Source: Stylophora pistillata
Lineage: Eukaryota
Direction: 5' to 3'
Assembly: GCF_002571385.2 (NCBI RefSeq)
Contig: NW_019218050.1
Coordinates: 276,333-340,332, forward strand
Length of the DNA stretch: 64,000 bases
Under the pieces are notes generated by a model, which did not search any database, was not told the origin of the DNA, and was given only the letters and a program-made list of their open reading frames with translations. The translations under genes and the position numbers were made by a program. Each line of letters starts with the position of its first letter. The stretch's first letter is position 1. Of the stretch, positions 48,301 through 51,300 are shown piece by piece.

Positions 48301-51300
48301 AGTTTTTAGAGCTGAAGAGGGAAATTCTTGAATCTTTCCAAGGGAGGCCAAGAGCCAAGCGTGAGCATAATGCTGGAGATGAGCATCGAGAGCAAAGTAG
48401 AGCTGCCGGAATCCAAACTTTACCGGTGCCGTCAACGATCCGAGCAAAGGCCTCAAAAATTCTTCTTTTATACAAGATGTTTGTATAAAATCTACCACTC
48501 ATCGCCAAATTTAGCATCTTGTAGGGAACTCATAGAGCACACAGAATCCGCATTGCCACGCTACCTTTATTCTCTCGCACACTCGCCCTATATACATTAC
48601 ACAGCATTACCCACGTGCTTCATACTAATTAGATTACGTCATCACCGATATTATTACACAAACACGAACACGATAGGGAGAGCTTGATAAATTAGAGATT
48701 TTTCAGAGTTTGTGGGCAGGTTTACCAATACATCTTGCTTCTGGACGACAAACTTTTGAATCGCAAGCTTCTGGTAAGAATTAAAGCCTGCGATTTTGAA
48801 ATTTGACGATGCTTGAAGAAAAGCTTCATTAAGAGCCACTATCTTGATTTTGTAACCTCAGGAGATCGTGGAACGATAAAACGAGAAGTATTATTGGTCG
48901 AATCATCTTCAGAAAATTTCGCGCGCGACAGTTCCAGAAAATGGAACTTTTGCTGTGATTGGCTAAAATCGGGAAGGCAATGTGGTTCGAATGTGAGCAG
49001 CCGTTTCTTTCGAGGGAAGCGTTGCCGCTGCGAAGGAGACTACTCACTTCTCCATGTTGATTTATTTTGACAAGAGGTGCAATTAAAAGGGAAAATGTTA
49101 TGAAAAGGATTGTATGACCAAACGAGTGAAATCGGGAATGCTATTTCTGGAGACATGATTTTTTCTGAAAATTAACACTTTCTGGTTAACATCCTAATTT
49201 TGTTGCACCTAACCCTTTTTCCTCGATTAGCCTTTTGCAGTTAGGGCTATGCTAAAGAGGCTTTGATACAAAAAACAACAGATTTTATCTAATATGTAGC
49301 AAATAATGTCGGGTCACTTGCATGGTAAGTAGTGTACGCTGTTTTGCTTGTCCGCTACTGCGTTAATTTTGTAAGAAATAAGAAAAATGATCAGATTTTG
49401 ATGTTGTTGTCATCAGATTGATGTGTACAGTTTTGGAGTTCTTCTCTGTGAAATGTGCACGCGGAAATTTCCAGATCCTGACCGTCGAGAGGAACAAATA
49501 TCCCAAGTGAAAAATGAAGAGTTTCGAAGCCTCATACAACGTTGCGTACAGCCAGACCCTGGGGAGCGACCTGATATGCAGGAAATTAGTTTTGAACTAG
49601 AGGCCTTGTTCGACCCCCAGTCAGAAATGGAAGACGATAAGCCATCAATTGGAGAGATAGAGCAAATGCTAAGAAGTGCTGTTATAGAAACTAAAGATGA
49701 AGATCAGTCAAAGGAAATACGCCAAGAAACAAATGAACTGCACACGACGAGCAGCATACAACCACGTCGAGAGATACCTGACTGGATCATTCCACGTGAA
49801 CAAATTGAGCTGACAGGTGACTGGCTTGGCAAAGGATCATTGGGATTGGTCTTTAGGGGCAAGTACAATGGCTTTGCCGTGGCCGTGAAGCAGATCCACG
49901 AGACTCTTCTTTCTCTTGACAGCCGAAGTTTGTATGAGCAAACGATAGACGTGGCTTCAAGATGCCGCCACCCTTGTTTACTCCAGTTCATTGGAGCAAC
50001 TCGCGACGAAGGATTTCCTTTGATCGTGACAGAACTCATGGAAAGAAGTCTAGAATCATTTTTAGCCTCGCGATCTCTCTCAGAAAAAGAAATCTCCTTT
50101 ATTTCTCAAGATGTAGCTGCGGCATTGAACTACCTCCACCACAAATTACCGTCTCCAATTGTCCACCGGAACGTCAGCAGTGCCAATGTGTTGCTTTGGC
50201 TACAAGGTCCACAATGGAGAGGAAAGCTGACAATTTCAATTGCTACCACCTTCCAGCAGGAAACCATGTCAACTGCTCCAGGTGATATGCTATACAGTGC
50301 ACCAGAGACAGTTAGCTCAAGGCAAACCGTGAAGGTTGGTTATAATTTGTAATTTAGCAGACAGTGTAATGTACCCTACGGTTTGAACCCAGATATCACA
50401 ATGATCGTTCGGTTTGAACGGCTGAAGCCCCTATTTATATGGTCTCGGGTACCGAGACAACCCTCCTCCAGAAGCAATTCTGCAGAGCGTTTATATGAAA
50501 GCTGACATCTGTAAACCCTCGTTCAGCCAGGCCAGGTTCTAATTTGACAGCGTGGCGTGCGACATGAAAGGAAAAGCTGTAATACGCACGGGCTCTGGTT
50601 ATAGAGTGCGTGCGCATTTTCTGTTCGAGTCGTCTCGTCTCGGGTAGGCGAAACAAGGTGTTTACACGAGGAAAAGTTGTCCATCCTGCCAGGGATACCC
50701 CAGCGGCCGAGGTGAGACAACTCACCCTCCGAGTTGTCTCGCCTACCCGAGACGAGTTCACAACCTAACGTAAATGGTCGGCTAAATTTTTTAAAGAAAT
50801 AGGTGAAAAGTTAGCTCGCCCAAGGTAACTCGGGGAAGGGTTGTCTCGGGTACCTGAGACCATGTAAATGGGGCGTGAGTGGGGTGCGATCAAGTGCTTT
50901 GCATGGTTTCGGACCCAAAGCCATTTGCTGAGATGCAGAAAAATATTTTGAGGTTTTTTGGCGTTAAAATAATCCTCTACTGGAGCATAGTTACATTTCG
51001 TCAATAGTCCTCAAAATCGTTATCTTTAGTTTTTCAGCTATTATTAGTTTAACCCTTGACGTTTTTGTGATAGTAGAGTTGTTGTAGATTTAGCAATGCG
51101 CACAATTTGGCTTATTTGTCCATTAACAGTAAGTCAGTGGATTTTTTTTTCTTGTTTTGATTAGATGGATATCTACAGTTTTGGTGTTCTTCTGTGTCAA
51201 ATGTGCATCTTGGAATCGCCAGATCGTGAAAGGCGTGAAGAGCAAGTCAAAATGGTGACAAACCAAGCGCTTCAAGAAATGATAAAGAGATGCTTGAAAA

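What the first reader, a model, noticed from the sequence alone, without database searches (positions are those of the whole stretch)
49417..50334. Conserved pseudokinase signature (HRN plus 'KLTISIAT') in the second domain of both tandem genes
Seen: in K2 (18014-18817) and K4 the second domain keeps the AVK lysine and APE. It has HRN for HRD and 'KLTISIAT' for 'KVSDYGT/S', identical in two otherwise diverged paralogs. Established: loss of both aspartates defines a pseudokinase; HRN occurs in mouse MLKL. Inference: this is a selected switch or scaffold domain rather than decay. The repeated intron position shows it arose by fusing two tandem gene copies, the last exon of copy 1 being joined to the main exon of copy 2.
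Basis: partly seen in the sequence, partly recalled or inferred. Interest (0 to 1): 0.75.

Follow-up and report, generated by a model that had tools for sequence, protein, structure and literature searches.

The report
Coral kinase gene with built-in dead kinase
This stretch is one exon of an expressed stony-coral gene that joins a working protein kinase to a conserved, catalytically crippled second kinase domain, an arrangement best known from plant immune receptors and animal JAK kinases.

Summary
Window 49417-50334 is exon 6 of a 7-exon gene (42318-51359, + strand). It matches an NCBI Stylophora pistillata protein of 907 aa: N-domain, coiled coil, active TKL kinase, linker, pseudokinase. 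The second domain keeps the VAVK lysine and APE, and reads HRN and KLTISIAT.

- The lasting signature is the loss of the DYG motif (to [IV]S[IF]). It defines one strongly supported clade. HRN does not: the third copy in this genome and K4's nearest relatives (Pocillopora) keep HRD.
- K4 is under purifying selection: dN/dS is 0.29 against its paralogue, and it is 80% identical to the Pocillopora orthologue, as is kinase 1.
It evolves about four times faster than its sister, so it is probably decaying.
- An origin by joining a last exon to a main exon fits the exon anatomy. The trees cannot separate it from an internal duplication.

The most likely role is a non-catalytic regulatory or scaffold module for the neighbouring kinase; this is inferred, not shown. 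The scan holds another first-reader note on this same gene (s1-775553).

The parts
42318..42623 (+). Exon 1: N-terminal domain of about 100 aa with no Pfam match. Borders are approximate.
   Evidence: tblastn of the stored NCBI protein P0163 on the window gives residues 1-102 at 99% identity. Pfam finds only the two kinase stretches in P0163.
44059..44124 (+). Exon 2. Borders are approximate.
   Evidence: P0163 residues 101-122 at 100% identity.
44616..44777 (+). Exon 3: start of the coiled coil. Borders are approximate.
   Evidence: P0163 residues 122-175 at 100% identity.
46344..46470 (+). Exon 4: coiled coil.
   Evidence: P0163 residues 176-216. RNA joint 46470|46846 with GT..AG in runs X2 and X9.
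46846..47804 (+). Exon 5: end of the coiled coil plus kinase 1 (K3) from the N-lobe to APE..TIK. It carries VAVK, HRD and KVSDYGS.
   Evidence: RNA joints lie at both ends.
47805..49416 (+). Phase-0 intron of 1612 nt at the family-wide position just before subdomain IX. It holds high-copy repeats.
   Evidence: The RNA contigs skip 1612 nt with GT..AG. DNA-run depth reaches 62,481 at 47867-48063.
49417..49602 (+). Exon 6, part a: C-lobe end of kinase 1 (IDVYSFG...ELEAL), homologous to the last exon of single-kinase paralogues.
   Evidence: dN/dS against K6 is 0.19.
49603..49770 (+). Exon 6, part b: acidic linker of 56 aa.
   Evidence: It is 69% identical to Pocillopora, and dN/dS is 0.41 (bootstrap 0.17-0.86).
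49771..50334 (+). Exon 6, part c: pseudokinase (K4) from the N-lobe to APE..TVK. Lys 49888-49890, Thr at the alpha-C Glu position 49942-49944, HRN 50164-50172, KLTISIAT 50224-50247.
   Evidence: dN/dS against K6 is 0.29.
50335..51164 (+). Phase-0 intron of 830 nt at the same position of the second domain.
   Evidence: RNA joint 50334|51165 with GT..AG in X2 and X9, absent from DNA run X16.
51165..51359 (+). Exon 7: C-lobe end of the pseudokinase (MDIYSFG...GMG) and the TGA stop. The 3' UTR runs on beyond it.
16597..17154 (+). K1: kinase part of the main exon of the older paralogue. It is open, with HRD and KVSDYGT.
18014..18817 (+). K2 middle exon of the older paralogue, with HRN and KLTISIAT. 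It is broken by TAG 18062-18064 and TAA 18077-18079.
   Evidence: End branch 0.57 against 0.12 for its sister. Relative-rate test p 9e-5.
19613..19801 (+). Last exon of the K1-K2 locus (VDIYSFG...DLG, stop TAA). It is open.

Best explanation
Window 49417-50334 is the sixth of seven exons of an expressed Stylophora pistillata gene. The species is inferred from NCBI names and a matching contig length. The protein has a short N-terminal domain, about 230 aa of coiled coil, a complete TKL-type kinase, a 56-aa acidic linker and a second kinase domain that cannot catalyse in the usual way. In that second domain the DFG-type Asp-Tyr-Gly is Ile-Ser-Ile, the catalytic Asp is Asn, and the alpha-C Glu is Thr. 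The ATP-site lysine, the GxGxxG loop, the catalytic-loop Asn and APE are kept.

Shown: the pseudokinase belongs to one old clade defined by DYG to [IV]S[IF]. That clade has been copied along with its partner kinase. This genome holds three loci plus remnants, all on one contig. The clade is also present in Pocillopora and in at least three unnamed assemblies. It is kept by purifying selection about as strongly as the active domain.

Inferred: the pseudokinase works without catalysis. It would act as a regulatory or scaffold partner of kinase 1, either in cis or across chains brought together by the coiled coil. This would resemble JAK JH2 on JH1, or KSR on RAF. Its activation segment, which retains Thr and Ser residues, is a possible substrate or switch. 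The catalytic-base position flips between Asp and Asn, which fits a structural rather than a chemical role.

The older copy K1-K2 in the same window is losing its pseudokinase exon.
For: Gene model and expression:
- RNA contigs from two polyA studies join 46470|46846, 47804|49417 and 50334|51165. The DNA run shows none of these joints.
- The stored NCBI protein P0163 maps to seven exons at 99-100% identity.

Motifs. Both domains match Pfam kinase models.

Single origin: the clade has support 100/99 in a tree of 57 rows and 180 columns.

Distribution:
- Three copies were found in the 398-Mb genome, all on contig C266.
- Only 2 of 63 own-genome matches span the whole fused exon.
- Pocillopora verrucosa XP_058971329.1 has the same architecture.

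Selection:
- dN/dS for K4 against K6 is 0.29 by NG86 (bootstrap 0.19-0.47) at dS 0.64. For K3 against K5 it is 0.19 (0.11-0.30).
- Identity to the orthologue is 0.80 for the pseudokinase, 0.81 for kinase 1 and 0.69 for the linker.
- K4 is not accelerated against P0005, K6 or P0136 (p 0.13-0.73).
- Among 18 Pocillopora-type variants, 32 of 192 pseudokinase sites vary against 22 of 55 linker sites (p 7e-4), and none of them touches VAVK or KLTISIATTF.
- The residues that differ from the active members are concentrated at catalytic positions: Asp, Tyr and Gly of DYG in 9 of 9 rows, the alpha-C Glu in 4 of 9, and the HRD Asp in 5 of 9.

Nearest solved kinases by sequence are TNNI3K, CTR1, B-Raf and IRAK4.
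Against: - The regulatory role is therefore an analogy.
- dN/dS rests on one paralogue pair, because no orthologous DNA could be fetched.
- The pseudokinase value (0.29) is higher than that of kinase 1 (0.19), though the intervals overlap.
- All five variants seen in exon 6 in the RNA contigs change the amino acid (P21S, K32R, K99R, L144M, L207V), against 1 of 3 in exon 5. This could mean relaxed or diversifying selection within the species.
- K6 and the Pocillopora orthologues keep HRD, so some unusual activity is not excluded for them.
- The species behind four of the clade's members are unknown.
Confidence: 0.6

Rival explanations
1. Integrated decoy or sensor, as proposed for plant tandem kinase-pseudokinase immune receptors. 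The dead domain mimics family kinases that are targeted by microbial or symbiont factors. Binding or modification of it releases kinase 1.
For: - The family is large, clustered and turns over quickly. There are at least 75 matches in this genome, 13 of them with stops, and decayed copies lie next to intact ones.
- Paralogues carry many different N-terminal domains (Pfam column).
- A tandem second domain has arisen several times: Porites P0165, Actinia P0166, and the fused exons P0011 and P0070.
- All five RNA variants in exon 6 are nonsynonymous.
- Plant tandem kinase-pseudokinases are likewise polyphyletic, and a decoy role is proposed for them (PMC6170490, passages read).
Against: - The pseudokinase is as conserved between genera as the active kinase (80% against 81%), with dN/dS of 0.29. 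That is not the pattern of a fast-evolving bait.
- I found no expression or infection data.
- I made no site-wise test for positive selection, because only three DNA sequences were available.
Confidence: 0.2
2. An unusual but active kinase. The second domain still transfers phosphate by a non-canonical route, at least in the copies that keep HRD (K6, Pocillopora).
For: - The lysine, the glycine loop in most members, the catalytic-loop Asn and APE are kept. HRD is kept in 6 of the 12 clade rows.
- From recall, some kinases that lack canonical residues, such as CASK and WNK, are active.
Against: - The metal-binding Asp is replaced by Ile or Val in 9 of 9 intact members, and the Gly by Ile or Phe.
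- K4 also lacks the catalytic Asp and the alpha-C Glu.
- The Asp/Asn position flips at least twice within the clade, which argues against a catalytic need.
Confidence: 0.08
3. A neutral passenger. The second domain is a dead remnant carried along by a working kinase gene.
For: This seems true for K2, whose exon has two in-frame stops, a degenerate glycine loop and a roughly four-fold faster rate than its sister. A fourth copy downstream of the window is full of stops and truncated.
Against: For K4 and K6, the bootstrap interval of dN/dS excludes 1. The reading frames are open in S. pistillata, Pocillopora and four unnamed assemblies. Conservation equals that of kinase 1, and amino-acid variability is lower than in the linker.
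Confidence: 0.05

Closest known systems
Plant tandem kinase-pseudokinase proteins (WTK1/Yr15, RPG1 and relatives)
   Same: One polypeptide carries an apparently active kinase followed by a pseudokinase. Origins are by duplication or fusion of kinase genes, the origins are multiple, and the families are lineage-specific (PMC6170490, abstract and passages). The coral family also shows several independent tandem forms.
   Different: There is no common descent. The coral domains belong to an anthozoan coiled-coil TKL family, and their nearest solved relatives are TNNI3K, CTR1, B-Raf and IRAK4. The coral protein has a long coiled coil and an N-terminal domain. No link to immunity has been shown. 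The pseudokinase is slow-evolving.
Janus kinases (JH2 pseudokinase next to the JH1 kinase)
   Same: An animal protein holds a kinase and a pseudokinase in cis. JAK2 JH2 has HRN and lacks the alpha-C Glu, yet binds ATP (review PMC13519141, passage read). K4 shares HRN, the lost Glu and the kept lysine.
   Different: The domain order is reversed. JAKs are tyrosine kinases with FERM-SH2. According to that review JAK2 keeps the DFG aspartate (DPG), whereas here the aspartate itself is gone.
RAF/KSR, and GCN2 with its pseudokinase domain
   Same: A pseudokinase regulates a partner kinase allosterically (recalled for RAF/KSR; GCN2 from the listing of PMC12867742). B-Raf is among the nearest solved sequences.
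   Different: KSR and RAF are separate proteins. The GCN2 pseudokinase lies N-terminal to its kinase. None of them shows the [IV]S[IF] replacement.
MLKL
   Same: A pseudokinase used as a switch and phosphorylated in its activation loop by a partner kinase (review PMC13519141).
   Different: No four-helix-bundle executioner domain was detected (Pfam). An active kinase sits in the same chain. I did not verify that mouse MLKL has HRN.

Membership tests
Pseudokinase (sequence definition: kinase fold lacking at least one of the VAIK Lys, HRD Asp or DFG Asp) | Homology to the protein kinase domain | tested here: met
   Pfam Pkinase 4.8e-25 and PK_Tyr_Ser-Thr 2.8e-23 on exon 6. Two kinase stretches in the stored full-length protein.
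Pseudokinase (sequence definition: kinase fold lacking at least one of the VAIK Lys, HRD Asp or DFG Asp) | DFG aspartate absent | tested here: met
   KVSDYGT of the active members aligns without gaps to KLTISIAT. Asp is replaced by Ile or Val in 9 of 9 intact clade members.
Pseudokinase (sequence definition: kinase fold lacking at least one of the VAIK Lys, HRD Asp or DFG Asp) | HRD aspartate absent | tested here: met
   Met in K4 and K2 (HRN). Not met in K6, P0005 or the Pocillopora sequences (HRD). It is not a clade-wide feature.
Pseudokinase (sequence definition: kinase fold lacking at least one of the VAIK Lys, HRD Asp or DFG Asp) | No phosphotransfer activity | not testable with these tools
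   Needs purified protein.
Tandem kinase-pseudokinase architecture (as defined for plant tandem kinase-pseudokinase proteins) | Two kinase domains in one polypeptide, the first with all key residues and the second lacking them | tested here: met
   The spliced mRNA joins both domains. K3 has VAVK, HRD, DYG and APE, while K4 lacks Asp twice and the alpha-C Glu.
Tandem kinase-pseudokinase architecture (as defined for plant tandem kinase-pseudokinase proteins) | Descent from plant RLK/Pelle-type kinase families | tested here: not met
   All close relatives are anthozoan proteins. This is an independent origin, so the likeness is one of architecture only.
Tandem kinase-pseudokinase architecture (as defined for plant tandem kinase-pseudokinase proteins) | Role in pathogen recognition | not testable with these tools
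   No functional data. No paper on these coral genes was found.
JAK family | FERM-SH2, then pseudokinase, then tyrosine kinase, in that order | tested here: not met
   The order here is kinase then pseudokinase. Pfam finds no FERM or SH2.
Anthozoan coiled-coil TKL kinase family (named 'probable serine/threonine-protein kinase DDB_G0271682/drkA/drkD' by NCBI) | Coiled coil plus a kinase with the SRCRHPCLLQFIGAT-type core and a phase-0 intron before subdomain IX | tested here: met
   K4 is 47-64% identical to paralogues in this genome. The intron position is shared by window genes A and B and by genomic contigs of other corals. K4 lies inside the family tree.

The most novel reading that the evidence does not exclude
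Stony corals and sea anemones have repeatedly built animal counterparts of plant tandem kinase immune receptors. In a large, fast-turning-over family of coiled-coil kinases with swappable N-terminal domains, a neighbouring kinase copy is captured through the shared phase-0 intron and then loses catalysis. It serves as a built-in bait or switch that reports interference by microbes or symbionts. Because the captured exon is symmetric (phase 0 on both sides), it can also be dropped again. This may be what is happening at K1-K2, where the flanking exons stay open and skipping the broken exon would restore an ordinary kinase.
Probability: 0.15. Interest if true: 0.8.

Novelty: new variant of a known kind. 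Interest (0 to 1): 0.45.

Why it matters
Kinase-pseudokinase pairs in a single chain are central to JAK signalling and to a newly recognised class of plant immune receptors. A conserved, independently evolved example in corals would give a third natural case for asking what a tethered dead kinase does. It comes with a built-in comparison: copies with HRD against copies with HRN, intact against decaying copies, and sister tandem forms whose second domain is still active. It also flags a large, unstudied, lineage-specific kinase family in reef-building corals that may bear on stress, immunity or symbiosis. On present evidence it remains a sequence-level finding. The gene is already in RefSeq under a generic name.

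Tried and rejected
- A degenerate DNA pattern for KLT[IV]SIA across the whole genome gave 30 matches against 36 for the reversed control, which is chance level. Only 3 of the 30 lie in a kinase.
- The scan of JGI metagenome contigs returned 68 loci. All of them are active-type kinases, and none is KLTxSIA-type, so I obtained no orthologous DNA for codon models.
- The idea that the linker is a relic of the coiled-coil end of the second gene copy is inconclusive. Local alignment beat shuffles in only 2 of 9 comparisons (P0017 z 4.6, P0011 z 4.1).
- Fusion of distinct paralogues against an internal duplication stays undecided. A tree that holds the kinase-1 clade and the pseudokinase clade together costs 14.75 lnL and is not rejected (AU p 0.18).
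- K1 falls outside the K3/K5 clade in the free tree but joins it at no cost (AU p 0.51). I therefore dropped the idea that K1-K2 has a different first domain.
- A search with the K2 reading frame found nothing closer than 56% identity (P0013). That gives no evidence on K2 expression. K4's own exon is also missing from that collection, so the blank means little.
- I did not use the large representative search. It clusters at 50% identity and carries no names, while the pseudokinase is 47-64% identical to active paralogues, so it could not settle the distribution.
- I did not see the supplementary tables of the coral genome papers or of PMC6170490. They may list this family or non-plant tandem kinases.
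- Paper searches were judged from their listings. From PMC6170490 and PMC13519141 I read passages only.
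Full report
WHAT IS THERE. The window is eukaryotic DNA with a GC content of about 0.40. Frame 1 of 49417-50334 is open for 306 codons. It encodes, in order, three things: the last C-lobe helices of one kinase domain (IDVYSFG...ELEAL), a 56-residue acidic linker, and a second kinase domain from the glycine loop to APE...TVK. Pfam kinase models match this exon and five other kinase exons of the window (6 of 6 tested).

The stored NCBI protein P0163 is 907 aa and is named 'probable serine/threonine-protein kinase DDB_G0271682 [Stylophora pistillata]'. 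It lies on a contig of 431158 bases, which is the length of this window's contig C266. It maps to the window in seven exons at 99-100% identity, from 42318 to 51359. A second named protein, P0084, is identical to the minus-strand kinase gene at 33139-34029. From these two matches I infer that the species is S. pistillata.

EXPRESSION AND SPLICING. I laid window 45700-51600 against three runs recorded as RNA and one DNA-type run, all kept as contigs. Two polyA RNA-Seq runs from different studies (X2, X9) contain contigs that join 46470|46846, 47804|49417 and 50334|51165, each with GT..AG ends. One contig bridges kinase 1 to exon 6 with about 380 letters on each side. Two contigs bridge exon 6 to exon 7. 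The DNA-type run X16 covers the region without any such joint, and the third RNA run (X14, random-primed) shows none either. No contig joined 47804 to 51165, so no isoform that skips exon 6 was seen.

THE OBSERVATION. K4 reads GKGSLG, AVAVK, HRN, KLTISIAT and SAPE. K2 reads AIAVK, HRN, KLTISIAT and SAPE. K1 and K3 read HRD and KVSDYGT/S. The family alignment has no gaps here, so KLTISIAT stands for KVSDYGTA: Asp becomes Ile, Tyr becomes Ser, Gly becomes Ile. Between K2 and K4 the eight codons differ only at two silent sites. K4 also has Thr where the active members have the alpha-C glutamate.

The K2 glycine loop is also degenerate (PSGDYG).

HOW MANY AND WHERE. The 398-Mb assembly has at least 75 matches to the K4 domain, 13 of them with internal stops. 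I examined 30 loci, and a whole-genome motif scan covered the rest of the assembly. Only three kinase copies carry KLT[IV]SIAT, and all are on contig C266: K2, K4, and K6 about 20 kb downstream of K4 and outside the window. K6 belongs to an intact third gene, K5-K6, which is the stored NCBI protein P0164 of 857 aa. K6 keeps HRD and the alpha-C Glu. A fourth, K3-like copy further downstream is full of stops and is followed by a truncated piece of a K4-like exon. Only 2 of 63 own-genome matches span the whole fused exon.

In the public protein collection the nearest relatives of exon 6 are exon-sized reading frames at 72-86% identity (P0001-P0005). All of them have HRD plus KLTISIATTF. More distant ones (P0006, P0007, P0013) have HRN plus KLT[IV]SIA, and P0032 has HRN plus KLSVSFS. 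P0003 shares a 90% cluster with Pocillopora verrucosa XP_058971329.1 (P0136, 917 aa), which has the same full architecture.

Among 276 stored proteins, 24 kinase-domain instances have [IV]SI at the DFG position. These include the window's own P0163 and the same-genome paralogue P0164. The named species among them are Stylophora and Pocillopora only. The hit lists also contained named proteins of Acropora, Montipora, Porites, Orbicella, Oculina, Desmophyllum and sea anemones, and none of those is of this type. This holds within the length windows of those searches and their best 120 rows.

PHYLOGENY. A maximum-likelihood tree was built from 57 kinase domains over 180 columns. The rows were own-genome paralogues, stored proteins, and both domains of the tandem proteins; no available row was dropped. 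All KLTxSIA-type domains, together with a decayed K6-like piece of P0167, fall in one clade with support 100/99. The branching order is P0032, then P0007, then (K2, P0013), then P0006, and finally a crown of three lineages: (K6, P0167 piece), (K4, P0005) and the Pocillopora sequences.

HRN is found in all the basal members and in K4. HRD is found in the rest of the crown. That is 6 rows against 6, and at least two changes are needed. The catalytic-base position therefore toggles between Asp and Asn, and K4's HRN may be a second, parallel change rather than a retained one.

The first domains K3, K5 and Pocillopora domain 1 form their own clade (100/97). K1 joins that clade at no likelihood cost (AU p 0.51). 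This is consistent with whole-gene duplication of one ancestral tandem gene.

Other tandem forms are separate events:
- In Porites P0165 the second domain has HRN but an intact DYG, and it groups elsewhere in the tree.
- In Actinia P0166 the two domains are sisters, and the second reads HGD and DFC.
- The fused exons P0011 and P0070 have an active-type second domain.

SELECTION. Results for and against constraint were as follows.
- Between K4 and K6 the pseudokinase part gives dN 0.18, dS 0.64 and omega 0.29 by NG86 (0.34 by YN00, 0.37 by ML). The bootstrap interval is 0.19-0.47.
- Over the same duplication, kinase 1 (K3 against K5) gives 0.19 (0.11-0.30) and the linker gives 0.41 (0.17-0.86).
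- Between the S. pistillata and P. verrucosa proteins, identity is 0.81 for kinase 1, 0.80 for the pseudokinase, 0.69 for the linker, 0.71 for the coiled coil and 0.73 for the N-domain.
- K4 is not accelerated against P0005, K6 or P0136 (p 0.65, 0.73 and 0.13).
- K2 has 35 unique changes against 9 in its sister P0013 (p 9e-5; 34 against 10 with another outgroup).
- Among 18 Pocillopora-type exon variants, 32 of 192 pseudokinase sites vary. The linker has 22 of 55 variable (p 7e-4) and the C-lobe of kinase 1 has 12 of 52 (not significant). VAVK and KLTISIATTF never vary.
- Against constraint: all five differences seen in exon 6 in the RNA contigs are nonsynonymous, though conservative, against 1 of 3 in exon 5. 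The numbers are small, and the runs may come from diverged lineages.

K2 is a decaying copy.

ORIGIN. Single-kinase paralogues in the window have a phase-0 intron directly before xDxYSFG, followed by a short last exon that ends a few residues after ...ELE (gene A near 3931-4830; gene B on the minus strand). Genomic contigs of other corals show a gap at the same place, and transcript-derived contigs are continuous across it.

Exon 6 begins like such a last exon, reads through where the stop would be, and continues like a main exon from just before the kinase domain. It ends at the same intron position of the second domain. Fused exons with a long coiled-coil linker (P0011, P0165, P0166) look like less-trimmed versions of the same event.

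Two cautions apply. The similarity of the linker to the coiled-coil end is significant in only 2 of 9 comparisons. And the tree does not reject both domains being closest kin (AU p 0.18), so an internal duplication of the block is not excluded. The distinctive first part of the exon (ISQV[KT]N..F...CVQ) is shared by K2, K4, K6 and the relatives. This suggests that the event happened once, before these copies split.

HOW IT PROBABLY WORKS. Shown: the pseudokinase is an expressed, conserved domain tethered to a complete kinase behind a long coiled coil. It has lost the metal-binding Asp throughout the clade and, in K4, also the catalytic Asp and the alpha-C Glu. It keeps the lysine, the glycine loop, the catalytic-loop Asn, APE and the core of the fold. 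Inferred: it has a non-catalytic regulatory or scaffold role towards kinase 1. My rough odds are 0.5 for regulatory or scaffold, 0.2 for decoy or sensor, 0.08 for unusual catalysis and 0.05 for a neutral passenger. The nearest solved kinases by sequence are TNNI3K, CTR1, B-Raf and IRAK4. From recall, several of these are controlled by dimer contacts.

Exon 6 (918 nt) and the K2 exon (804 nt) are both multiples of three and are flanked by phase-0 introns at homologous positions. Skipping either one would give an ordinary single kinase. At K1-K2 the flanking exons are open and only the middle exon is broken.

COMPARISON AND NOVELTY. The architecture is that of the plant tandem kinase-pseudokinases, which are likewise polyphyletic and arose by duplication or fusion (PMC6170490, passages). 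In reversed order it is that of JAKs. A review states that JAK2 JH2 and HER3 carry HRN and still bind ATP (PMC13519141, passage). Membership by descent fails for both families. The gene is already in RefSeq under a generic name. Seven full-text searches found no paper that describes a coral or cnidarian tandem kinase-pseudokinase (judged from listings). I therefore class it as a new variant of a known kind.

As a result there is no orthologous DNA, no species names for P0005, P0006, P0007, P0013 and P0032, and no structure. The spliced protein was used only as a stored database entry.

Noticed in passing
G000 contig C266, about 5-8 kb (K5-K6) and 10-12 kb (decayed copy) beyond the window's end (L061 4150-7461; L062 712-1971): A third, intact tandem gene K5-K6 has a second domain with HRD, an intact alpha-C Glu and KLTVSIAT. 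After it comes a fourth, K3-like copy riddled with stops and a truncated K4-like exon. This looks like birth-and-death turnover of the tandem gene.
   Followed up: yes
window 47867-49048 (intron between K3 and K4): Word depth in the DNA run reaches 62,481 at 47867-48063, against about 120-270 over the exons. The intron therefore holds high-copy repeats, probably transposon remains.
   Followed up: no
window 50634-50756: A 23-nt inverted repeat, 96% complementary, with 77 nt between the arms, lies in the intron after exon 6. It may be part of a small mobile element.
   Followed up: partly
window 49477, 49511, 49712, 49846, 50035: All five differences between the RNA contigs and the assembly in exon 6 change the amino acid (P21S, K32R, K99R, L144M, L207V). 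In exon 5 it is one of three.
   Followed up: partly
stored protein P0167 (NCBI, S. pistillata LOC111345467, 1052 aa, on another contig of 97023 bases): This annotated protein looks like a chain of decayed K3-, K4- and K6-like pieces. Its motifs are broken (for example QLKVLIPTTF) and its tree branches are long. It is possibly a pseudogene annotated as coding.
   Followed up: partly
G000 C195:495774-496313 (L018), G000 C444:190969-191508 (L023), and Porites lobata P0165 second domain: HRN also occurs on its own in family members that keep DYG (L018, P0165). L023 combines HRN with KLSGCGT. Loss of catalytic residues recurs across the family.
   Followed up: partly
G000 C870:54223-56906 (minus strand): Two kinase-domain matches lie 1.2 kb apart. 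The upstream one aligns to residues 25-306 of the fused exon. This may be another tandem kinase gene of a different type.
   Followed up: no
window 42318-42623 (exon 1): The N-terminal domain has no Pfam match. It aligns weakly (E 0.3-2) with the N-termini of paralogues that carry CAP-Gly domains (P0196, P0222, P0195, P0176). This is a lead for the scan's other note on this gene.
   Followed up: partly
Pocillopora-type variants P0001, P0002 and P0121-P0134: The linker carries an internal duplication of about 39 residues that repeats the end of kinase 1's C-lobe and the start of the linker. P0003 and P0136 lack it. The linker is prone to insertions and deletions.
   Followed up: no
window 54885-56842 (minus strand): Two long reading frames of 296 and 265 aa look like parts of a retroelement.
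   Followed up: no
window about 5623-6207: A run of N (an assembly gap or masked stretch) interrupts a 408-aa reading frame on the minus strand.
   Followed up: no
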